A DNA stretch of 33,278 nt from Octopus bimaculoides. Its lineage: Eukaryota. Location: assembly GCF_001194135.2 (NCBI RefSeq), contig NC_068981.1, forward strand, positions 11,917,823 to 11,951,100, read 5' to 3'. Shown here in pieces: positions 3,924-30,342 of the stretch (the first letter of the stretch is position 1; each line of letters begins with the position of its first letter). The notes under the pieces are model-generated. The model did not search any database. It was not told where the DNA came from and saw only the letters and a list, made by a program, of their open reading frames with translations. The translations under genes and the position numbers were made by a program.

Positions 3924-4343
3924 NNNNNNNNNNNNNNNNNNNNNNNNNNNNNNNNNNNNNNNNNNNNNNNNNNNNNNNNNNNNNNNNNNNNNNNNNNNNN
4001 NNNNNNNNNNNNNNNNNNNNNNNNNNNNNNNNNNNNNNNNNNNNNNNNNNNNNNNNNNNNNNNNNNNNNNNNNNNNNNNNNNNNNNNNNNNNNNNNNNNN
4101 NNNNNNNNNNNNNNNNNNNNNNNNNNNNNNNNNNNNNNNNNNNNNNNNNNNNNNNNNNNNNNNNNNNNNNNNNNNNNNNNNNNNNNNNNNNNNNNNNNNN
4201 NNNNNNNNNNNNNNNNNNNNNNNNNNNNNNNNNNNNNNNNNNNNNNNNNNNNNNNNNNNNNNNNNNNNNNNNNNNNNNNNNNNNNNNNNNNNNNNNNNNN
4301 NNNNNNNNNNNNNNNNNNNNNNNNNNNNNNNNNNNNNNNNNNN
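3924..4343. other. Assembly gap (N run)
   Basis: N characters. Confidence 1.
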
Positions 4344-4721: not shown

Positions 4722-4731
4722 NNNNNNNNNN

Positions 4732-6759: not shown

Positions 6760-8330
6760 TACTTTAGGGTAGATATCTTATTAAGCTCTCTGGTTCGATA
6801 TGTACACAGTTTTCCACACTTATCATATCTCTTCCTCTGTTTGGTCTCTTCATGTATAGGTGAACAGTGTCAGCACGTGGATGATGGGCCCCATGCATCC
6901 TTATAAGCTTTCTTGACTTCCTGTCTATCTCCTTTAGCTCCTCCTCTTTCCACTTCAGGATATTAGCGCCACATCGAACTGCTGCGACTGCGCGCGTGTT
7001 TATTGCCAAAATTATGTTTCTGGCATTCAGTTTTAAAGCCATTATTATTCTCACTAAACGTGGTTAATTTCTTTTTGTTTTTTCCTTCATGTCGTTGTGT
7101 TTGGTTCCATCTGCCTCAAGTATTCTCAAGTATTTATAACTGAGCTGAGGTTGAATTGCCTTCATCATCTCACTATTTGGCAAACCTATGCTTTCTGTTC
7201 AGACAAGCTTTCCTCACCTCATCATCATAGTAGCACATTTTGAGAGCCCAAACTCCATCTTAATATCATTAGAAAAAATCGCAGAGACTGGAGTTGGCTG
7301 TCCAGTTTTGCCTCACTTTTAGTGAACAACTTCAAATTGTCCATGAAAAGCAAGGGGTTCAGTTATTCTTTACCTCTTTCCAGGCCATAACCCAACTTCG
7401 TTTTCTTTAGTATTTCACTCAAGCTGATCATTTTTAAAACAACACCAGTAAGGACGCACTGTCCCCCAGAAGATTTCTCTCTTGATTTTTTTACTTCTCC
7501 CAATACTTGATTCCCTGTTGTCAGTTCCGTTTCCACCATTTCATATCGTTGAAAATAAGGCTTCTATTGTTTTCTGCTACACCTTACATTTCCATTGGTC
7601 TTAATAGTCAGGAGCGTAGTATCATATCGTCTGTTTTTCGTTGACGCTCAGGTTTGTGTTCCTTGTCTTGCAGTTTCTAATAAGTACATTATTAAAATCT
7701 GCAAGATCCTTCGTTCCCCAGCACCTCTTTCAGCACACTTTGTGTTCAATAGATAAAAGCCCACTTTTTCCTAAGTATCTATACAATAAACCGGCCAAAG
7801 CACTGCGTTTTTATCATTTCTGTTGTTATTTTTATGTTTCCTTGGAATTCTATATTTCTTCACCTATCTTGGAATTCGTGCATCCACTCCGCTTCATCAT
7901 TATGCTCTGCAGGTTGGTCACAGATCTCTCTTCAGAATGCCTTGCTTTCCTTTGCATCTAGATTCATTGTTACGTGTATTTGTCCATCTAACTCATGAAA
8001 CTGTTTCTTCTGATTTGCTTCAAACAATATATTTTGCTTGTGTTGTTTTGTTCAATTCCCATATCTTTCCAGTTTCGCTTTGATTCATACGACTCTTTGT
8101 TTCAATCCTTCCAATATCAATTCATACACTTTATCTCTTATTCTATATGTTCTTTCCAGGATTATTCTCATCTTTTCATTCTGTAATTCCCCTCTACTCA
8201 ATCTACTTGTTCTAAATGTCTTTTTCACTTTCCTTCTCACAAATTCTTCTATGCCAGTATGGTTCTTTATGTTCTGAATGATTTCTTCTTTTGTATTCGA
8301 TTCTATCAGTGACAACGATAGCTGCAGGCC
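6760..8330 (-). mobile_element. R4/Dong-clade RLE LINE, decayed fragment with part of the RT and an internal deletion
   Basis: Manual translation gives EHKVC*KRCWGTKD...RNCKTRNTNLS, GDS, LLFMDNLKLF, DIKMEFGLSKCA and YKYLRILE. ORF 6764-7054 reads KLNARNIILAINTRAVAAVR...DRKSRKLIRMHGAHHPRAD. These are R4/Dong-type RT motifs. The 5' side abuts (TTA)n. Confidence 0.85.
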
Positions 8331-8349
8331 AAATAATCTTGTTAGTCTC

Positions 8350-8350
<1 letters not shown>

Positions 8351-8398
<48 letters not shown>
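8351..8398. repeat. (TTA)n microsatellite
   Basis: Directly visible. Confidence 0.95.
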
Positions 8399-8829
8399 GA
8401 GTGAGAGAGCAGTGCATGCCATCACAGTGACACTGGGGTAAAATATACGAAGTCCATTATACTCATCATGACTACCCGTCTGATAAGGGTACAACAGGCA
8501 CATGCATCAAAACCATATGTGTGCGACATGGTGATCTCATATCAAGATAAACAGCGCATGACCTCGCAAGTGGGGCCCAGTTAGAATTTCCTTCAGGTCA
8601 AATAGCCCATCCCGCCCAAAAGGTCCCTGAATAAGATATGTTTAAGGGTGTTGAGCAAAACACCCATTTTTCTAAAGATCTATTATCCAAACCCCAAACA
8701 TTTCCCTTTAACACATGTCTATGTTGCTCCCCCACTCCTTCTGCTCATGATCAGAGATGCACATATCGTCAGCCACAACTGACAAGCAAATCTGTGGGAT
8801 TAAGTAGAATATTTGTTGTAGTCCATCTT
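8399..8829 (-). mobile_element. Non-coding interspersed element flanked by (TAA)n, copy 1
   Basis: Highly similar to 13479-13929 and bounded by TTA-type tracts on both sides. Strand inferred from the (TAA)n tail. Confidence 0.75.
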
Positions 8830-8930
8830 ATCATTATCATTATTATTATTATTGTTGTTATTATTATTATTATTGTTATTATTATTATTATTGAGGCAGG
8901 TGTCTACTCTTCTTCTTCTTCTTCTTCTTT

Positions 8931-8972
<42 letters not shown>

Positions 8973-9085
8973 TTTCTAGTAGTAACAGTAGTATGACGAT
9001 GTCGAAGTTGATAACGATGACAGGAATGGTAATGAGGAAGAGGATGTGGTGGATGTTGATGTGATGATGATGATGATTATGATGA
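8830..9085. repeat. Trinucleotide mosaic (ATT)n-(TCT)n-(GTA)n-(GAT)n
   Basis: Directly visible; source of the poly-L/poly-S ORF at 8852-9064. Confidence 0.9.
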
Positions 9086-11020
9086 GGGTATTGATGTCTA
9101 TTATGTCTACTCCGAAGAGAGTCTGAGTGTAATTTAATCCCTCGGGATAATTACGTATGTCTATATATCGCAGAATTTCATATTACCATTCTTGAAACAA
9201 GGGAGGATGGGAGCAATAAAGTGGGTAAGATTTGAGAATTGTGTTAGATTCCTTTGACATTAAATTTACCAAAGAATATCGATTTCTTGTGCCATTTCAA
9301 AAGGTACGCTTATTTTCTCTTTCGAGTCTGCTGTAGAACACTATATACATAACATACAGCAACATGCATTAAATTCATTCTTATTACTCGTATTTATTAC
9401 TTTCTTGAAGATCAAATCCAGTTCTTATCAAGGTTTTTAGCATGGAAAGTTTTTACCTCTATAATAATAACACGAAAACAATTTTCCTAAATCAGAGATT
9501 TTTGTAACAATCAAATGCAATCTAAAGCATGAAAATTAAGTTTTGAGCGCAGTATCACTAAATTATAATGGTGTTTATGTTCTTTATTATATTATCTCAC
9601 CATTTGCCTTTTAATTGAAGTTGTAATTAACTTTGAAGCTAAATGAAATCATTATTCATCAAATAAACGTAGGAGATGTTTGAATAATTTTTTTCTCATT
9701 TCTTTGCAGTATTGGCATTATGAAATTAATTCTGGTTACGCTAACAACATTTTACTAATTAATATTTTTTTCTTTTGCTAAATCAAATGAAAAATTATAT
9801 ATAGAATATTTAATGTGTTTTATTATTTTGTTATTCACTTCTCAGACTCTATAGCAGAGCTGAGAAATCGTTACATAACATACATTGGAATTATAATTTC
9901 CTTCTCATACTCAATGCCCTTAAACTAATCTTTCCCGTTTGTTAATAGTTTACCTGGAATAAATTCCACTTGTTATCTCTCTACACCACTGTTTCAAAAA
10001 CTTTTGTAACTCACGCCATTCTTAAGATTAATGAAAATATGTGAGCGTATATTGATCCTAAAATCAAACACTGTACTAAAAAAAAGAAGATATTTATATA
10101 TTTCATTCTAAAAATATAAATGATGTGAGCAATAGATAATTATTCAAACAATCTAAATTTTTTAGGAAAGTGGGATCGCTCATTCACTGCAAATTCAACT
10201 TAATTTACTTCCAAACTTTACGTATATTTTATAGCATTTTAATTAGTCAGAGCTGTGGACATTCAAAGTTTTACAGATGTATTTCGATTTTGATGAATAA
10301 GTTTATGCAGCATTATATAGTTGCTCTATAAAGCTAATTTTGTTTCTTTCACTCTATAATTAATGTGTTTTATAGCAGGAGAAAATGAGTGCTATGTGGA
10401 ATTAAATAATATCATAACGATAGCATATTTAAAATTTCATTTTGTTTTTATTTTTCAAACTCATTAAATATAAATTTATTATTTTTATGCTGCACTAGCT
10501 ACAACATTTCGCTCACTAATGTGTCTCGGCGCCGTGTTTAGGGTCCATTTCTGCACATTACAACACATCTGTGTGGGAAACAAGGCAATATTATAATTAA
10601 CGGTAACTAGTAATCAGATATTTTAAACATTCATACTGCATGTGTGTATAAACTTATGGTATCATTACTTAATTTCCTAAATCGTAAAGCACACATATAC
10701 TCAGACATAAAACATATATTTCACTATAACATGCAATATTCATAGAAATTATAGGCTTAATTACGCGTGAATTCGGTGTTCTGTTTCTCTGCTAACCCTA
10801 TTTCATAGTTTTTTTCCTCTGCTTCAGTTTGCCTACCGCAAGATAGACTCAACCACGCCCTCTCCCGCCCTGAACATCTCTCTGAATATATGGTTATATA
10901 CCTCTTTCTCTCTGTATCTAACTCGGTTTCTTCGTCTCCTAATTCGCTTATTCTTCTTATCTATTCCCTAGTCTCTGTTTTTTTCTTTTTCTCTTTCTGT
11001 CTTTCTTTTTTCTTTCTCCC

Positions 11021-11023
<3 letters not shown>

Positions 11024-11060
<37 letters not shown>
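11024..11060. repeat. (CT)n microsatellite
   Basis: Directly visible. Confidence 0.95.
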
Positions 11061-11063
<3 letters not shown>

Positions 11064-11744
11064 TACAAAATATGTGTTACCTCTTGTAATATATTAAGTA
11101 AATCCCTGTCAATCATTACTATCAGTGATGTTTATCACGCATTATCAGAAGTTGAATATTAACGATAATAAGCGATAAAAATTATTTCTGCACATTCCCT
11201 TTGCCAAAGGATAATAAACATGCAATGTAATGGTAGTCTTGGGAAAGCCGTATCATTACATGGCTATGAAACTAAACGCAAGCGTACAGAAAAAGAACAA
11301 ACAAAACAAACCTAAGAAAACAAACATCCATAATCTCATCACTACACACACACACACACCACTGGATCAAGTGGAGAGGACCAATGTGGACGGTCGGCAT
11401 GTTAGAAATACTATAGACATCATGTTCACACCATGTCCAACTTACTTATGCTTATTCGTACATATTAGTCAATTGAGATCTCTAGGTGTTACTAGACACC
11501 TTCTGCACATCACAACCAAATGTATTATGTGTCGACAAGTATATCAGTAGAGAAGGTCAGCGTAAACAGATTTGGTAATTAAGATGCCACACACTAGTAA
11601 CTTATATTGGATCTCATCCATTGCATTAGACTCTTCGGTCATTCATAACAATGAATATACACAAATCATGTAACTTTTCCTTGCAGTTTGAAAGCCTTCT
11701 AAATTCGTAAGTTTACTGCCATTCCGTCGTTTACGTCGAGAAGT

Positions 11745-12033: not shown

Positions 12034-13478
12034 CATCCCAAGTTATTGATTACATAAAAGAGAGTAACATTTATTTCTATTGAGGATCTCAAAATAACAA
12101 TTATTGCATGCTGTCCAATCGAAAAATATTAAATTTCCGTTTTTAATATTAAATCGCGCCCCATTACCCCAACCAGAATATTAAAAAAATCTATAATAAT
12201 ATTAAGAACAGCTGCCATTACTTTGATAGAAATTGCAACACCTAGGAATGTAGTTAGAGCACAAGGCTAATAGTTTGACCTGAATTACAAGTACAGGATA
12301 TCCGTGCATTTCTCTTAAAACAAATTTATCAACATGCGCACTCTTTAAGAAAGCCAAAAGCAAGAACTGAATATAGCGTTTGCTACATGCCTATTTATAT
12401 AAATAGAAAAAAATAAATTCTTTTTATAAACTAGCAAAAAACCCAACCTTGTCCATATCACAATTCAGAATCATATCTTGAATTGCTTAATGAACTATCG
12501 GAAGTTGTTTATAATCTTACAGGCATATGATGTTTAGAATATTATAACACGTAAAAACAATATTTTGAAACAAATTATAAGAGCATCCACACAATAAGTA
12601 CTAAAATTAAACTTCGTCCTGCAGAAACACCCAAACAGCAAATTCAATTCTGATTGTTATGGCTTTGTAACTTATTAAAAAGCTCTCGGAGCAACTACAT
12701 AAATCTAACATCTAATCCAGAAGCATTCAGTTCCACCTTTTTTCACGCGTTTAAGAGTGAGTTCAGATTAAAACAACATCCAACAATTAACTTTCCCTTT
12801 AACATAGTTCTAACCTTTCTGTCTCTAATATAGAATATCTAATCTATTTCATCGTTGCACACTAATCACAACCCTGGATGTTCTCTAGTTAAACAAAAGG
12901 ATTTTCAATCAACGCTTCTAGTACAGTGTAAACAGTTTAAACCAAAAGTGTCTAACCTAACACTTCAATCTTCCTTAAGAAACGTGTTCGAGCTCTTAAT
13001 TTTCACAAGGAATCTTTAATAGATTACTTTCCTTTCATCTTTTTCATTTTTCTATAGCGATTCTTAAACATATATCTATGTAGTCTTCTGACATAATCAG
13101 TTAATGGTTTTTATTATTATTACAATCGAGAAAATGACTGATCGTACACCAGTAGGACTCTGTTTAACCCTCTTATCTAATTTCCTTGTATCTATAATGT
13201 AATCTCGCAAAATTTCTTTTCATCAGCAATAATAAATTCTTTACTTGTGTTATAATAGCAATAAGATATTAAATACAACTTTGAATGTTTTTATCAGTTA
13301 AATTGTACATCTATCTTCATCTACGTTGTTGTCGTCGACCTTGTCGATGTCACCATCATCGTTGTCATCGTCATCGTCTACGCCCTCCTTCTACCCTTTC
13401 CCTTTCCCCCTCTGTGTCATCATCTTTATTACTACCTCTTCGTAGCCATTTACATCTTTACTATGCTTTATTATTATT

Positions 13479-13928
13479 GAGTGAGAGAGCAATGCATACC
13501 ATCAAAGTGACACTGGGGTAAAAAATACGAAGCCCATTATACCCACCATGACTGCCTGGGTGATAACGGTACACCAGGCACATGCATCACAACCATATGT
13601 GCGCGACATGGTGATCTCATATCAAGATAAACAGCGCATGTCTCGCAGGTGGGGCCCAGTTAGAATTTTCTTCAGGTCGAGTAGCCCATCCCGCTCAAAA
13701 GGTCCCTGAATAAGGTTTGTTTAAAGATGTTGAGCAAAACACCCATGTATCCAAGGGACATGCTCAACTGGTTAAGGTCAAACAACCGGAAAGCAAATCT
13801 GTGGTATTAAGAAGAATATTTGCTGTAGCCTATCTTTTTATACCAAGAGAAAACAATGTACATGATAACACTTCCAATCAATTAAGATCAGAAACCATGA
13901 GAGTCACTGCTTGGTACTGAATCCGGGG

Positions 13929-13929
<1 letters not shown>
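13479..13929 (-). mobile_element. Non-coding interspersed element flanked by (TAA)n, copy 2
   Basis: Similar to 8399-8829; preceded by (TTA)3-4 and followed by (ATT)n at 13930-13968. Confidence 0.75.
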
Positions 13930-13967
<38 letters not shown>

Positions 13968-13968
13968 G
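13930..13968. repeat. (ATT)n microsatellite / (TAA)n tail
   Basis: Directly visible. Confidence 0.95.
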
Positions 13969-14510
13969 TTCAGTAGTTTTATTTTTATAAAGTGCTTTCA
14001 CTTCACTATCGAGCGCAGCTCTGTGTGCCTTGGGTATGTGCTGTGGTTTGCTGTGATGCTCTTATGGTTACTGTATTGAAAGTGTTTTGCGTAGGAGGTG
14101 TGCAGTGCCCAGTAGTGCATTTTATATGTATGTGTTGTTGCGTTTTCGTTCTTTGGGTAGAGCACTGCTGTAAAATAAGCGTGTAGGATCGAAATGTATT
14201 CCTGACGTGTCCATTTATGCCGTTTTGGTTTTATTTGCGGGACATGAGGAACAACGTCCGGACCTTTATTTTGACGGTCATCATTTTCTTAGGGTTCATT
14301 TCTGTTGTCAGATTGTTTTGCACGTGCAGCTCTTCGTACTTTTTGCGTAACAAGTTTAAAGTACGCATCTCCCGGTTGTTATTCTTGGGTGGAATAATAC
14401 CGGTATTATTTAATCTGTTTGTAATTTTTTGGTACATGGTGTTTGGGGCTGGAGATGGTCTGGTGTTGATGTAACAAGCGTGATTACGTTTGCTGTGCGA
14501 GTCGTGGAGA
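13969..14510 (-). mobile_element. Internally deleted (bipartite) R4/Dong derivative: N-terminal region fused to the C-terminal end and 3'UTR
   Basis: The minus strand reads KPKRHKWTRQEYISILHAYFTAVLYPKNENATTHTYK (about 14231-14121). It is followed at once, in another frame, by ALLGTAHLLRKTLSIQ* (14118-14068), a 3'UTR and (TAA)n. Confidence 0.7.
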
Positions 14511-14708
14511 TGATATCTAGTTAAAATACATCATTATATTTGGAAAAATAGAAATAAATTTCAATGAGTATTACTTACTCGGATATAGTCCAACCCTTTG
14601 ACAGCTATTTTTTGGCTCCATGCGATGTCTTTATTTCCGATGTTTTTGGATAAATTTCGGAGCTGTGATTTATCGTTCTCACATGTTAAATGTCCCCAGT
14701 GTAATCCC

Positions 14709-14762
<54 letters not shown>
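14709..14762. repeat. (TAT)n microsatellite / (TAA)n tail
   Basis: Directly visible. Confidence 0.95.
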
Positions 14763-14763
<1 letters not shown>

Positions 14764-15425
14764 TTATATTTTGTTTTGTCATTGCACAGCTTGTGACGCT
14801 GGAGATGTACCACGGTGTCAGCTGTTCACTACCAGTGAACTAAGGTAACACTTCTAAGTTTTCGAGCACCATCCGGAGTATTCGAGCGGTTCCAAGCAGT
14901 GCTGTTTTCTGCAAGTGCTCCTCCCTTATTGTAGCCCCTATTTGCTCCATATGCTTCTCAAGATTTTTACTCACTGTTCCCGGGGTTCCGACATTTATTG
15001 GTAATACTACCAAGCTAACGTGTTATATCTATCGACTTGTCTTTCTTCCTTATAGCATACCTTGTTTTCATCTAGACATGGTATATCTATGATCCAGCTT
15101 CGTTCGCCTTCTCTCTCAGTTAACACTATGTCTGGTTTCCTATTCTCGATCTCATGTTCACACTGAATCATAAAATCCCATAGGATCTTTGCAATATCAT
15201 TTTAGATGATGCCTTCGGGTTTATGTTCGTAGCACTTTTTTGCTCTGTCAAGTCCATACTTGTTGCAAAGATCCAACAGACAATGATTGCTATTGTCATG
15301 ACGTATGTTATATTCCTTCTGGGCTAGTGGCGTACATTGACGGGTAATATGGTTTTACCATTTTGTCCACAAATTCTGCACTTATCACTTTCTGATGTGT
15401 TGTCTATTTTGTATTTGATGTAATT
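14763..15425 (-). mobile_element. R4/Dong-clade LINE 3' end (zinc knuckle, RLE domain, 3'UTR, TAA tail)
   Basis: Translation with frameshifts: DKCRICGQNG...CTPLAQKEYNIRHDN...KILWDFMIQCEHEIENRKPDIVL...IIDI...LQKTALLGTARILRMVLE. This contains the CCHC knuckle, RHD and PD-(D/E)xK-type motifs. Confidence 0.85.
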
Positions 15426-15724
15426 GGCATTATTTATAATTATCATCTTCATTCTAATCATCAACTCTTGTTGACAGAGATTTTAATATTGGACCCTGTT
15501 AATATCTATCACATCGCGATAATAATTTCTTGATAAATACTTGGCATTAGTCTCTCATATCCCGAGAGAGAAGGTCCAGCAATTTCTTGCAGGAGAACAA
15601 GTACAAATGATCTATTTATAATGATCAGATGTATGTGCGGTAGATTAGCTTACTTTCTCAATCAAATGAACGTTGCTCCGACAGATGCAGGGTGTTCCAA
15701 ATGTTACGTGTCGAATTGATTACA

Positions 15725-15830
15725 GAGCAACATGAAATTAACTGTTTTGCTTAAGAACTCAACCCACCACACGGTCTAGGAATTGAAGCCAACTCTCGTG
15801 AGCGCAACATCCTAGGCACTAGGCCGTGGT
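15725..15830 (-). mobile_element. Degenerate family B SINE head fragment
   Basis: agagcaacatgaaattaactgttttgcttaagaac...ggaattgaa...cactaggcc resembles the family B heads at 5660-5745 and 11920-12030. Confidence 0.5.
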
Positions 15831-16282
15831 CCCTGACGGCTAAATAACTTTCTTTCATATTTCCTGAACGTAGATCTTCCATTTAGCATTGGGAGAGATG
15901 TCATCGACTTACTTCTTCTCTAATTAGAATTAAATATTACTATTATATTCAGAACTATCGTTACTATTAATGTTAACACTAATTAAATACTAATCATGCA
16001 ATATAACTCTTAATACCATTACGAATTTTATTGTTTTTTTTATTTTTAAATACATGGGAATTTTTGAGGAAAAAAATCAAAAGCAATTGTATAATAATGA
16101 ATAGAAGCACCTAGTATCAAATTTCTAGCAAATTAAGCATAGATGTGTAATCTGTGACCTCTGACAGTTTAGGTCTATTATATAGAACTACATCAAATCC
16201 ATTGGTATCCCCAAATACACTTTTGTCGAATGTAACCAAATAAATTGTATATCTTAATATATATTCATATTCAATATATATA

Positions 16283-16605
16283 TGGATCAGTGGTTAGAGC
16301 AAAGAGCTGAGGATCATGAGGTTGTGAGTTCGAATTCCGGACCGGGCTGCGCGTTGTGTTCTTGAGCAAGACACTATATTTCACGCTGCTCCAGTTCACT
16401 CAGCTGTAGAAATGAGTTGCGACGTCACTAGTGCCTAGCTGTGCTGTCCCTTGCCTTTCCATTGGATAACATCGGTGGTGCGGAGAGGGGAGGCTTGTAT
16501 GCATGGGCGATTGCTGGTCTTCGACAAACAAGATTGCCCGGACTTGTGCCTGGGGGTAACGTTCTAGGTGCAATCCCATGGTCAGTCATGACCGAAGGGG
16601 GTCTC
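16283..16605 (+). mobile_element. tRNA-derived SINE family B, near full length
   Basis: A-box TGGATCAGTGG at 16283-16293, B-box GTTCGAATTCC at 16328-16338, CORE-like cttgagcaagacac, and tail ggtgcaatcccatggtcagtcatgaccgaagggggtct. Confidence 0.88.
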
Positions 16606-23640: not shown

Positions 23641-24243
23641 NNNNNNNNNNNNNNNNNNNNNNNNNNNNNNNNNNNNNNNNNNNNNNNNNNNNNNNNNNNN
23701 NNNNNNNNNNNNNNNNNNNNNNNNNNNNNNNNNNNNNNNNNNNNNNNNNNNNNNNNNNNNNNNNNNNNNNNNNNNNNNNNNNNNNNNNNNNNNNNNNNNN
23801 NNNNNNNNNNNNNNNNNNNNNNNNNNNNNNNNNNNNNNNNNNNNNNNNNNNNNNNNNNNNNNNNNNNNNNNNNNNNNNNNNNNNNNNNNNNNNNNNNNNN
23901 NNNNNNNNNNNNNNNNNNNNNNNNNNNNNNNNNNNNNNNNNNNNNNNNNNNNNNNNNNNNNNNNNNNNNNNNNNNNNNNNNNNNNNNNNNNNNNNNNNNN
24001 NNNNNNNNNNNNNNNNNNNNNNNNNNNNNNNNNNNNNNNNNNNNNNNNNNNNNNNNNNNNNNNNNNNNNNNNNNNNNNNNNNNNNNNNNNNNNNNNNNNN
24101 NNNNNNNNNNNNNNNNNNNNNNNNNNNNNNNNNNNNNNNNNNNNNNNNNNNNNNNNNNNNNNNNNNNNNNNNNNNNNNNNNNNNNNNNNNNNNNNNNNNN
24201 NNNNNNNNNNNNNNNNNNNNNNNNNNNNNNNNNNNNNNNNNNN
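23641..24243. other. Assembly gap (N run)
   Basis: N characters. Confidence 1.
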
Positions 24244-26230: not shown

Positions 26231-26340
26231 NNNNNNNNNNNNNNNNNNNNNNNNNNNNNNNNNNNNNNNNNNNNNNNNNNNNNNNNNNNNNNNNNNNNNN
26301 NNNNNNNNNNNNNNNNNNNNNNNNNNNNNNNNNNNNNNNN
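26231..26340. other. Assembly gap (N run)
   Basis: N characters. Confidence 1.
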
Positions 26341-27535: not shown

Positions 27536-27759
27536 TATATTTCTTCTTTCTATTACATGCTACAGACTGTTTACTGCAGCAATTCTAGGATTTTGTCTCG
27601 CATGGTTTCCTCTAACATATCTACTCCAATTATTTGATCTGATTTTTATTTAACGTTTATTCTGTTTCACGATCGTCTAAGCTGTACCACACAAAGAAAA
27701 CCATCTTTTGTAAAATTGCTTACGTAAATCCACCCATCGACACATAAAAACCATACACT

Positions 27760-27990
27760 TGTAAATGTATATATAGAACAAAGATATTACTACTTCGAAA
27801 CCTTGAGCTTCTATATCCGGATTACAAATTTACATTTATACGAATAATAATTGGTGCACTTGTGTTTCTTAGTAAATGCCTAACTGTCAGTATGGATAAG
27901 CTTGGATTTTCAGAAAAAGAAATCAACCGACCTGTGCATTACAAATACAATCTGTAAGTAAAACTTTGCAACATTTTTATCAGGTTTAAA
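27760..27990 (+). mobile_element. 3' end of a further RLE-type LINE (distinct lineage), decayed
   Basis: Frame from 27790: LLRNLELLYPDYKFTFIRIIIGALVFLSKCLTVSMDKLGFSEKE, then LQIQS after a frameshift. This fits the (P)IIIGALG C-terminal motif of RLE LINEs. Confidence 0.55.
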
Positions 27991-28659: not shown

Positions 28660-28850
28660 CAAAATACAATCAAGGCATTGTGGCATAATAGGGTTGCAAA
28701 ATCCATACGTTGCCATACAAAACAAAGACTGTCCCGGAATTCATATATGCATTAACGACGGGAATGCATTTTCCTTTTTTGGTAACACATTGCATTCGGC
28801 TATCTTCGCCAAATCATATGACAGTATAATCGTCCTAAAAGTTGGATTTT
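28660..28850 (-). mobile_element. Possible decayed CRE-clade LINE fragment
   Basis: Broken frames DLAKIAECNVLPKKENAF (to 28762), EFRDSLC (28742-28722) and YGFCNPIMPQCLDC resemble the WLNVLP.KE.GF.L.K.EFRDAL.LRYG motif I recall from CRE-like elements. Confidence 0.4.
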
Positions 28851-28970
28851 CTGCACCAGCAGTATTCCGGCCTTTGCTTGGATTCCGACAGTGTTAATGG
28901 CCTAGTAATCGGGTTGAAGGCTTCTCTGGAAATACCCCAACTGACTTTAGCTGTACATATGTTTATATAT

Positions 28971-29378
28971 NNNNNNNNNNNNNNNNNNNNNNNNNNNNNN
29001 NNNNNNNNNNNNNNNNNNNNNNNNNNNNNNNNNNNNNNNNNNNNNNNNNNNNNNNNNNNNNNNNNNNNNNNNNNNNNNNNNNNNNNNNNNNNNNNNNNNN
29101 NNNNNNNNNNNNNNNNNNNNNNNNNNNNNNNNNNNNNNNNNNNNNNNNNNNNNNNNNNNNNNNNNNNNNNNNNNNNNNNNNNNNNNNNNNNNNNNNNNNN
29201 NNNNNNNNNNNNNNNNNNNNNNNNNNNNNNNNNNNNNNNNNNNNNNNNNNNNNNNNNNNNNNNNNNNNNNNNNNNNNNNNNNNNNNNNNNNNNNNNNNNN
29301 NNNNNNNNNNNNNNNNNNNNNNNNNNNNNNNNNNNNNNNNNNNNNNNNNNNNNNNNNNNNNNNNNNNNNNNNNNNNNN
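28971..29378. other. Assembly gap (N run)
   Basis: N characters. Confidence 1.
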
Positions 29379-29796: not shown

Positions 29797-30342
29797 TCAG
29801 GTCATCCCATAAGGTCTGTCCGAATTTTGAATAAAGAAAACAAGTGATCAAATGTTATATTTAATTGAAATTTAATCATCAATGTACTTTCCCTGATTAT
29901 CTATGACTTCCCTCTATCTATTTACAAGCTTTTTAATCCCATCATTGTAAAGCTCTTTTGGTTTCAAAGCGAAGAACCCTGAAATGTCACTTTCGACCTC
30001 CTCGTGGTTTGTGAAATTTATNNNNNNNNNNGAAACAAACGGTTGTCTGAAGGATCAAGGTCGGGAGAATAAGATAGATGAGGAATTTTTCCCAACCCAG
30101 CACTTCGATCTTCTCTGATGTGATATTTGCAGTGTGGGGTCGCACATTGTCCTGATAAAATATAACTCCTATTCGAGTCATTGAAGCGAGACATTTTTAC
30201 TTCAAAGCTTGGCTCAAGCGCTCTAATTGCTGACAGTAGACTTGAGCATTGATTGTTGTATTAGGTTGTAACAATTCAAAGTGAATTACTCCTTTGCAAT
30301 CCCACCAGATAGAGAGAAGAACCTTTTTCCCATGAAGTTCCC
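29797..30342 (-). mobile_element. Mariner (Tc1/mariner) transposon, 3' part with one TIR; decayed transposase
   Basis: Translation: LHGKKVLLSIWWDCKGVIHFELL...YCQQLERL...GVIFYQDNVRPHTA...LGWE...YSPDLDPSD, which carries the mariner HDNARPH and YSPDLAPSD motifs. A TA at 29795-29796 is followed by the TIR TCAGGTCATCCCATAAG. A 10-N gap lies at 30022-30031. Confidence 0.9.

What the first reader, a model, noticed from the sequence alone, without database searches (positions are those of the whole stretch)
13969..14510. Bipartite mini-Dong: N-terminal motif joined straight to the C-terminus and 3'UTR
Seen: on the minus strand, KRHKWTRQEYISILHAYF...TTHTYK runs directly, at about 14118-14121, into ALLGTAHLLRKTLSIQ*, about 100 bp of 3'UTR and a (TAA)n tail. 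The first motif is the kind found near the start of R4/Dong ORFs and the second at their very end. The entire RT and RLE (several kb) are missing while both ends are kept. Established: internally deleted LINE derivatives that retain both ends can spread as non-autonomous elements (known for R2 SIDEs and RTE bipartite SINEs). Inference: this may be a member of such a Dong-derived family.
Basis: partly seen in the sequence, partly recalled or inferred. Interest (0 to 1): 0.7.

Follow-up and report, generated by a model that had tools for sequence, protein, structure and literature searches.

The report
Internally deleted Dong-like LINE copy
This is a 741-bp dead remnant of a jumping gene that targets TAA microsatellites: it kept both ends and lost the roughly 3 kb in between, which is a known kind of relic, and I could not test whether it ever multiplied as a parasite of its parent.

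Summary
On the minus strand, window 14708-13968 is one 741-bp unit between two (TAA)n arrays. It consists of a full-length 5' end, with 5'UTR and about 106 N-terminal codons (14708-14119). This is fused to the last 16 codons, the stop, a 100-bp 3'UTR and a (TAA)13 tail (14118-13929).

The N-terminal part matches a conserved N-terminal domain (profile E=9e-29). In two related loci that domain is followed by a reverse transcriptase. One of them, L007, continues through the zinc-binding CCHC motif and a restriction-like endonuclease (RLE) to a '...GTAH...' C-terminus.

Six independent related loci all lose similarity to the window at exactly base 14119. The C-terminal peptide matches the extreme end of a Dong-like C-terminal profile (E=4e-5). 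It carries the His signature of the lineage that has this N-terminal domain. By comparison with L007, about 3.2 kb is missing.

The family claim could not be tested. Related loci carry other internal deletions with different breakpoints, so I favour a one-off deletion derivative (0.6) over an amplified SIDE-type family (about 0.2). Interest is low to moderate.

The parts
14709..14767 (-). (TAA)20 array directly upstream of the element's 5' end. It is the target microsatellite and also the tail of the neighbouring 5'-truncated Dong-like copy.
   Evidence: Tandem Repeats Finder, (period 3, 20 copies, 96% matches); sequence.
14438..14708 (-). 5'UTR of the mini element (271 bp), with a full-length 5' end (GGGATTACACTGGGGACATTTAAC...).
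   Evidence: Homologous 5' ends in relatives start at a microsatellite at the equivalent of mini nt 12. L014 starts right after (AGA)n and L006 about 13 nt after (ATG)n. blastn similarity to L006 and L014 runs from mini nt 50-97 onwards.
14119..14437 (-). Remnant of the ORF's N-terminus: ATG at 14437, a frameshifting 10-bp deletion near 14298-14301, and the first half of the conserved N-terminal domain (14288-14119: ENDDRQNKGPDVVPHVPQIKPKRHKWTRQEYISILHAYFTAVLYPKNENATTHTYK).
   Evidence: phmmer against 1.84 billion representatives: 14 hits, best E=1.9e-20 at 67% identity. Alignment A1. Profile E=9.3e-29. The 10-bp gap is seen against L004.
14118..14119 (.). Deletion breakpoint: 14119 is the last base with N-terminal homology and 14118 is the first base of the GCA (Ala) codon of the C-terminal remnant.
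   Evidence: All related loci lose similarity at 14119. Relatives continue ...AAAATCTGGAAGAAA (TYKIWKKN), whereas the window continues GCACTACTGGGC.
14068..14118 (-). Last 16 codons of the parental ORF (ALLGTAHLLRKTLSIQ) plus the stop codon TAA (14070-14068).
   Evidence: C-terminal profile hit, E=3.7e-5, to profile positions 39-53 of 53. 12 of 15 residues are identical to the L008 C-terminus ...TLKGTAHILRKTLSI*.
13968..14067 (-). 3'UTR, 100 bp, ending ...AAAACTACTGAAC directly before the tail.
   Evidence: Sequence. It has no DNA-level relative among the fetched loci. The predicted fold is not significant (z=-1.7).
13929..13967 (-). (TAA)13 tail or remaining target array, 100% pure.
   Evidence: Tandem Repeats Finder.

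Best explanation
This is a single, dead, internally deleted copy of a Dong-like non-LTR retrotransposon. The parent belongs to the R2 superfamily, carries a restriction-like endonuclease (RLE) and is specific for microsatellites.

A full-length element of about 4 kb, or its RNA, lost roughly 3.2 kb between codon ~106 of the ORF and the 16th codon from its end. The lost stretch held the second half of the N-terminal domain, the reverse transcriptase, the CCHC motif and the RLE. What remains is 590 bp of 5' end fused to 151 bp of 3' end, sitting in a (TAA)n array. It encodes nothing usable, because the remnant ORF is also frameshifted.

I think it most likely arose once at this locus. Between the two one-off routes, I lean slightly towards a DNA-level deletion after a full-length copy had inserted. 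A template jump by the reverse transcriptase during target-primed reverse transcription would give the same product and cannot be told apart here. I do not think it is a member of an amplified family.

Shown: the anatomy, the breakpoint, and the homology of both halves. Inferred: the size of the deletion, a single parent, and the one-off origin.
For: Anatomy and flanks.

N-terminal half:
- Profile E=9.3e-29, with the alignment cut at profile position 72 of 187.
- Relatives continue TYKIWKKNN..NKLANLRR.
- The breakpoint falls at 14119 in six independent loci.

Link to a Dong-like LINE:
- L007 carries the same domain followed by RT (RVT_1), CCHC, RLE (NRPDVI...LIDM) and ...QKITLMGTAHI.
- L015 has the domain followed by the start of the RT (E=3e-11).
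- A related RT-to-RLE ORF (from L002, the His-type lineage) matches solved R2 retrotransposon proteins (E=1e-20) and the Pfam families RVT_1 and zf-RVT.

C-terminal half:
- Profile E=3.7e-5, at the very end of the profile.
- His at the R/H position occurs in 4 of 4 members of the lineage that has this N-terminal domain and in 0 of 33 of the other lineage.

Full-length 5' end.

Deletion size: about 3.2 kb, by L007 coordinates.

One-off reading:
- Relatives L008 (2,234 bp lost), L012/L013 (about 650 bp lost) and L015 carry other internal deletions with other breakpoints.
- There is no second copy in the 33-kb window, although it holds at least two further Dong-like fragments.
- No mini-type junction ORF appears among the 14 representatives found.
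- The literature calls SIDEs rare (PMC6740152).
Against: - The one-off claim therefore rests on base rates.
- Both termini are kept precisely and the size (741 bp) is typical of a SIDE.
- The remnant N-terminus is close to the family consensus and has no stop codon, and the flanking arrays are nearly pure. These features fit a fairly recent insertion of an already short RNA.
- The window also holds a SINE-like repeat with an (AAT)n tail in two copies. Trans-mobilisation into TAA arrays may therefore occur in this genome.
Confidence: 0.6

Rival explanations
1. It is a member of an amplified non-autonomous family, a Dong-derived SIDE. An internally deleted RNA that kept the 5' end and the 3'UTR plus tail is recognised in trans by the reverse transcriptase/endonuclease of autonomous Dong-like elements. 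It is then copied into (TAA)n arrays by target-primed reverse transcription.
For: - It has a precise full-length 5' end and a complete 3'UTR with tail, inside a TAA array.
- The remnant ORF is near the family consensus, with no stop codon.
- Other Dong-like copies in the window show the machinery has been active here.
- A TAA-tailed SINE-like repeat occurs twice in the window.
- R2 SIDEs have exactly this architecture (PMC3414825).
Against: - No second copy was found anywhere: not in the window and not among the protein-library hits, which are all parent-type at the junction.
- Relatives show different one-off deletions.
- No 5' ribozyme was detected.
- None of these is decisive, because the source genome itself could not be searched.
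Confidence: 0.22
2. It is a hybrid of two different Dong-like lineages, with the 5' part from one and the 3' 151 bp from another. It would have been joined by a template jump or by recombination, as in the R2/R1 hybrid SIDEs.
For: - The window holds at least two C-terminal lineages: ALLGTAR in the neighbouring copy and GTAH in the mini.
- The first three residues (ALL) fit the other lineage better.
- No parent carrying both halves was recovered.
Against: - His, Thr and Ser-Ile in GTAHLLRKTLSI match the C-terminus of the family that carries the N-terminal domain (L008: GTAHILRKTLSI*).
- His occurs in 0 of 33 members of the other lineage.
Confidence: 0.08
3. There is no real single element. Either a heavily 5'-truncated Dong copy inserted into an older copy, or the assembly joined two repeats wrongly.
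For: The window comes from a scaffold with six N gaps. Repeats in microsatellites are hard to assemble.
Against: - The sequence just upstream of the junction is not a TAA array.
- Nothing downstream of the tail continues the older copy: there is no similarity to the parental sequence beyond the breakpoint anywhere in the window.
- At most about 5 nt of possible shared sequence lie at the junction, too little for an assembler to collapse on.
- No N gap lies within 9 kb of the element.
Confidence: 0.05

Closest known systems
R2 SIDEs (Short Internally Deleted Elements) of Drosophila (Eickbush and Eickbush 2012, PMC3414825)
   Same: The 5' end of an RLE-type, site-specific LINE is joined directly to its 3' end. 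RT and endonuclease are lost, and the element sits at the parent's specific target.
   Different: - R2 SIDEs are shown to be multi-copy, with 5' junction variation typical of TPRT, and they keep a demonstrated 5' self-cleaving ribozyme.
- Here there is one copy, and no ribozyme was found.
- The target is a TAA microsatellite, not the 28S rRNA gene.
Dong of Bombyx mori and the R4 clade (PMC3774820 and references in it)
   Same: - Insertion in (TAA)n with a TAA tail.
- Judged from relatives, a parental ORF with a central RT and a C-terminal CCHC motif plus restriction-like endonuclease.
   Different: - The window copy lacks RT and RLE, so it is a derivative and not an autonomous member.
- The RT of its relatives was not placed in a phylogeny here.
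- Relatives abut other microsatellites as well: (AGA)n, (ATG)n, (CAA)n and (TA)n.
- The 5' HDV-like ribozyme shown for Dong was not detected.
Persaeus, a SIDE derived from the CR1 element Zenon in Lepidoptera (PMC6740152)
   Same: It is an internally deleted derivative of a LINE that keeps both ends.
   Different: - Persaeus is an abundant family whose copy number tracks that of its partner.
- Its parent has an AP-type endonuclease and no microsatellite target.
RIME/ingi of Trypanosoma brucei (from my own knowledge, not checked here)
   Same: It is a bipartite element made of the first and last few hundred bases of its autonomous LINE.
   Different: RIME is a high-copy family in a different LINE clade. 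No copy number is known here.

Membership tests
Dong-like / R4-clade RLE LINE (autonomous element) | Sits in, and ends with, a (TAA)n microsatellite. | tested here: met
   (TAA)20 lies 5' at 14709-14767 and (TAA)13 lies 3' at 13929-13967.
Dong-like / R4-clade RLE LINE (autonomous element) | Encodes a reverse transcriptase followed by a CCHC motif and a restriction-like endonuclease. | tested here: not met
   None of these is present between 14708 and 13968. They are present in the relative L007, and CCHC plus RLE in the neighbouring copy. The window unit is therefore filed as a derivative, not as an autonomous member.
Dong-like / R4-clade RLE LINE (autonomous element) | The conserved extreme C-terminus (...LLGTAxxLRKxL, with the stop a few residues later), about 80-150 bp before the tail. 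| tested here: met
   Profile E=3.7e-5 against the last 15 profile positions, followed by the stop and a 100-bp UTR.
Dong-like / R4-clade RLE LINE (autonomous element) | The RT of the parental lineage groups with R4 and Dong in a phylogeny. | not tested
   No reference R4 or Dong sequences were on hand. The only result is that a related RT-to-RLE ORF matches solved R2 proteins (E=1e-20), which places the lineage in the R2 superfamily.
Dong-like / R4-clade RLE LINE (autonomous element) | An HDV-like self-cleaving ribozyme at the 5' end (shown for B. mori Dong, PMC3774820). | tested here: inconclusive
   No Rfam match at E<=10 in 13400-15800. There were no hits to my own strict nested double-pseudoknot descriptor in the mini, L006 or L014. 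These copies are decayed and the descriptor is strict.
SIDE (short internally deleted LINE derivative that propagates in trans) | Both termini of the parent are retained and the coding interior is deleted at one junction. | tested here: met
   The 5' end matches the 5' ends of relatives. There is a single breakpoint at 14119|14118. The C-terminus, UTR and tail are present.
SIDE (short internally deleted LINE derivative that propagates in trans) | Several copies share the same junction at different genomic sites. | not testable with these tools
The source genome is absent from the searchable collections. The window has no second copy.
SIDE (short internally deleted LINE derivative that propagates in trans) | An autonomous partner with matching 5' and 3' ends exists in the same genome. 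| tested here: inconclusive
   The window holds other Dong-like fragments (14768-15425 and 6770-7276), but none matches the mini's ends at the DNA level. The closest relatives found elsewhere are 67-76% identical over the 5' half only.

The most novel reading that the evidence does not exclude
The unit is one copy of an amplified Dong-derived SIDE family. That would be the first short internally deleted, trans-mobilised derivative described for a microsatellite-specific R4-clade LINE. It would show that about 590 nt of 5' end plus 151 nt of 3' end are enough for recognition by the parental RT/RLE and for insertion into (TAA)n.
Probability: 0.2. Interest if true: 0.45.

Novelty: new member of a known kind. 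Interest (0 to 1): 0.25.

Why it matters
If it is a one-off, it is ordinary transposon debris. Its use is for annotation: it marks a compound TAA microsatellite that has been hit repeatedly by site-specific LINEs, and it defines the 5' end, N-terminal domain and 3' end of a poorly described Dong-like lineage.

If the junction proves to be multi-copy, it would add a rare case of a SIDE (the literature calls them rare, PMC6740152). It would also delimit the minimal cis-acting RNA needed by a microsatellite-targeting R2-superfamily reverse transcriptase. That is of some interest because R2-type enzymes are being studied for site-specific insertion.

Tried and rejected

Searches that found nothing:
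- The word-indexed protein search with the stitched mini ORF found nothing. The exhaustive search was needed.
- The junction 20-mer gave no hit in metagenome, prokaryote-genome or viral contigs. This says little, because those sets are unlikely to hold this genome.
- An exact look-up of six window ORFs found none in the collection.
- Pfam gives no family for the N-terminal domain. My impression that it is Myb/SANT-like is unsupported.
- No HDV-like ribozyme was found by Rfam or by my own descriptor.
- No significant RNA structure was found in the 3'UTR or 5' end, and there was no covariation in the conserved 5'UTR block.
- The 3' 151 bp has no DNA-level relative among the 15 fetched loci.

Rejected readings:
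- A nested insertion of a truncated copy is rejected, because nothing downstream of the tail continues the parental sequence.
- I noticed a splice-site-like motif in the 5'UTR (GA|GTAAGT ... TTTTAACTAG), but the acceptor is not conserved in relatives, so I dropped it.

Full report
**What is there**

Read on the minus strand, the region is a chain of insertions in a TAA microsatellite:
- a 5'-truncated Dong-like copy (about 15425-14768), ending in (TAA)20 at 14767-14709;
- the unit in question (14708-13968), followed by a perfect (TAA)13 at 13967-13929;
- a SINE-like repeat (13928 to about 13465).

The unit is 741 bp long. Its parts are:
- a 271-bp 5'UTR (14708-14438);
- a remnant ORF that starts at the ATG at 14437;
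- the peptide ...KPKRHKWTRQEYISILHAYFTAVLYPKNENATTHTYK, ending at 14119;
- directly after it, in another reading frame, ALLGTAHLLRKTLSIQ and a stop (14118-14068);
- 100 bp of 3'UTR.

**The 5' half**

The word-indexed protein search found nothing. The exhaustive phmmer search of 1.84 billion representatives gave 14 hits, all to the N-terminal half. The best was E=1.9e-20 at 67% identity.

Aligned (A1), the hits define a conserved domain: KRHKWTREEYISILHAYFTAxLYPKNENTTTYTYKIWKKNN...NKLANLRR.IxK. A profile built without the window's own sequence hits the window with E=9.3e-29. The alignment stops at TYK(M), which is profile position 72 of 187. The window therefore holds only the first part of this domain.

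At the DNA level, seven contigs representing six independent related loci are 67-76% identical to the 5' half:
- L004, from an ENA metagenome assembly;
- L006, L009/L010/L011, L012/L013 and L014, from Logan assemblies of runs SRR11869384, SRR11869385, SRR11869391 and SRR11869394.

The six whose alignment reaches that far (all but L014, which ends at 14166) lose similarity at window base 14119. They continue ...AAAATCTGGAAGAAA (TYKIWKKN), where the window has GCACTACTGGGC.

**Is this the N-terminus of a Dong-like LINE?**

L007 is a 20-kb ENA contig. It carries the same domain, followed by an RT (Pfam RVT_1), a CCHC motif, an RLE block (NRPDVIAKDYEAQTCFLIDM...) and ...EMQKITLMGTAHI. L015 carries the domain followed by the start of the RT (tblastn E=3e-11).

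A related RT-to-RLE ORF, taken from a 5'-truncated copy in L002 of the same His-type lineage, matches solved R2 retrotransposon proteins across RT and endonuclease (E about 1e-20). It also matches Pfam RVT_1 and zf-RVT.

The lineage is therefore an RLE-bearing LINE of the R2 superfamily. Its association with TAA arrays is the Dong hallmark (PMC3774820). I did not place its RT in a phylogeny, so 'R4/Dong clade' remains a description by features.

**The 5' end is full length**

In L014 the homologous sequence starts immediately after an (AGA)n array, at the equivalent of mini nt 12. In L006 it starts about 13 nt after an (ATG)n array. The window unit thus begins where full-length relatives begin.

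**The 3' half**

The C-termini of 33 Dong-like ORFs found with the neighbouring copy as query all read QKTALLGTAR(I/L)LRKVL, with the stop 2-8 residues later. A profile of these hits the window piece 14121-14071 with E=3.7e-5, at its last 15 positions.

The window has His where all 33 have Arg. His is found in all four C-termini of the lineage to which L007 belongs (L002, L003, L007 and L008). L008, from the same family as L007 (86% DNA identity over their shared 5' part), ends ...TLKGTAHILRKTLSI*, followed by a UTR and (AAT)4. That is 12 of 15 residues identical to the window, including the His, Thr and Ser-Ile positions.

This is the best available evidence that both halves come from one lineage. 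It is suggestive and not proof, because no parent holding both halves at high identity was recovered.

**Size of the gap**

By L007 coordinates, the segment between the two breakpoint equivalents is about 3.2 kb (8323-11498). It holds the rest of the N-terminal domain, the RT, the CCHC motif and the RLE.

The remnant ORF is additionally frameshifted by a 10-bp deletion near 14298-14301 that none of the relatives compared shares. The unit therefore cannot encode a function of its own.

**How it arose**

Three routes give this product:
- (a) a DNA-level deletion after a full-length insertion;
- (b) a template jump by the RT during target-primed reverse transcription, a behaviour documented for R2 in vivo (PMC3414825);
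- (c) copying of an already short RNA that belongs to a SIDE family.

A nested insertion of a truncated copy is excluded, because nothing beyond the tail continues the parental sequence.

The indirect evidence is as follows:
- The window has no second copy, although it holds two or more other Dong-like fragments.
- All library hits that reach the junction are parent-type.
- Internal deletions with other breakpoints are common among relatives: L008 lacks 2,234 bp including the RT, L012/L013 lack about 650 bp, and L015 is shortened between the N-terminal domain and the RT.

This makes a one-off origin (routes a or b) the more likely reading, at 0.6. Within it I lean slightly to route (a).

Some features point the other way and keep the SIDE reading alive at about 0.2:
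- both termini are kept precisely;
- the remnant N-terminus is near the consensus and has no stop codon;
- the flanking arrays are nearly pure;
- a TAA-tailed SINE-like repeat occurs twice in the window.

**If it were mobile**

By analogy with R2 SIDEs, the 3' 151 nt plus tail would be the RT recognition and priming module. The 5' end would supply processing or second-strand functions.

I found no HDV-like ribozyme and no significant or conserved RNA structure. These negatives are weak, because the copies are decayed.

**Verdict**

The family inference is untested and somewhat disfavoured. This is a known kind of object: an internally deleted LINE copy with SIDE-like architecture, in a lineage for which no such derivative seems to have been described. 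Interest is low to moderate.

Noticed in passing
window 14768-15425 (minus strand): A 5'-truncated, frameshifted Dong-like copy of a different C-terminal lineage lies directly upstream. It has CRICG (CCHC), RKPDIVL...IIDI (RLE) and ...QKTALLGTARILRMVLENLEVLP*, then a 79-bp UTR. Its (TAA)20 tail is the 5' flank of the mini element. Its best protein relatives are 54-60% identical ORFs from ENA metagenome assemblies.
   Followed up: yes
window 8399-8827 and 13465-13928 (minus strand): A SINE-like repeat is present in two copies that are about 92% identical over their 3' 270 bp. Both end ...CTCTCTCACTC(AAT)n and both abut TAA arrays. It may be a non-autonomous element mobilised by the TAA-specific machinery. 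Its 3' end shows no obvious similarity to either Dong-like 3'UTR.
   Followed up: partly
window 6770-7276 (minus strand); weak pieces at 27748-27954 (+) and 28803-28901 (-): There is a further Dong-like RT fragment (tblastn E=8e-32, 41% identity to the RT of L002). There are also two weak fragments resembling the Dong-like C-terminus (E=0.012 and 0.55). The lineage is evidently abundant in this genome.
   Followed up: partly
L008:1058-2260 (ENA ERZ25072740 ctg49759): A related element in another sample is 5'-truncated inside the N-terminal domain. It has its own 2,234-bp internal deletion that removes the RT, at the junction GAACCAGCA|CCAGACATCAT, which has a short imperfect homology. It ends ...GTAHILRKTLSI*, then a UTR and (AAT)4. 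It is an independent RT-less derivative with different breakpoints.
   Followed up: yes
L012/L013:1-700 and L015: L012/L013 is a 5'-truncated copy in (TAA)n with an internal deletion of about 650 bp just after the N-terminal domain. L015 sits at a (TA)n array and is shortened between the N-terminal domain and the RT. Internal deletions are frequent in this family.
   Followed up: partly
L014:1-25, L006:1-35, L008:960-1057, L012:1-23, L015:1-17: The 5' ends of relatives of the same N-terminal family abut different microsatellites: (AGA)n, (ATG)n, (CAA)n, (TAA)n and (TA)n. Subfamilies may target different repeats (my recollection is that named R4-clade relatives do this; not checked here), or target choice may be loose.
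   Followed up: no
window 14505-14575 (minus strand) and the homologous parts of L006, L014 and L009: A block of the 5'UTR (TATCCGAGTAAGTAATACTCATTGAAATTTATTTCTATTTTTCC) is clearly better conserved than its surroundings across copies that are otherwise 63-76% identical. No conserved RNA structure or covariation was found, and its function is unknown.
   Followed up: partly
window ~15700-15880 and ~16290-16600: These sequences look like tRNA-derived SINE heads and bodies (...GGTTGTGAGTTCGAATTCCGGACCGGG...TTCTTGAGCAAGACAC on the plus strand). ARAGORN and Rfam call nothing in them. The source organism was not identified.
   Followed up: no
window 3924-4343, 4722-4731, 23641-24243, 26231-26340, 28971-29378, 30022-30031: There are six runs of N, 1561 bases in all, so the window comes from a gapped scaffold. 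None lies within 9 kb of the element.
   Followed up: yes
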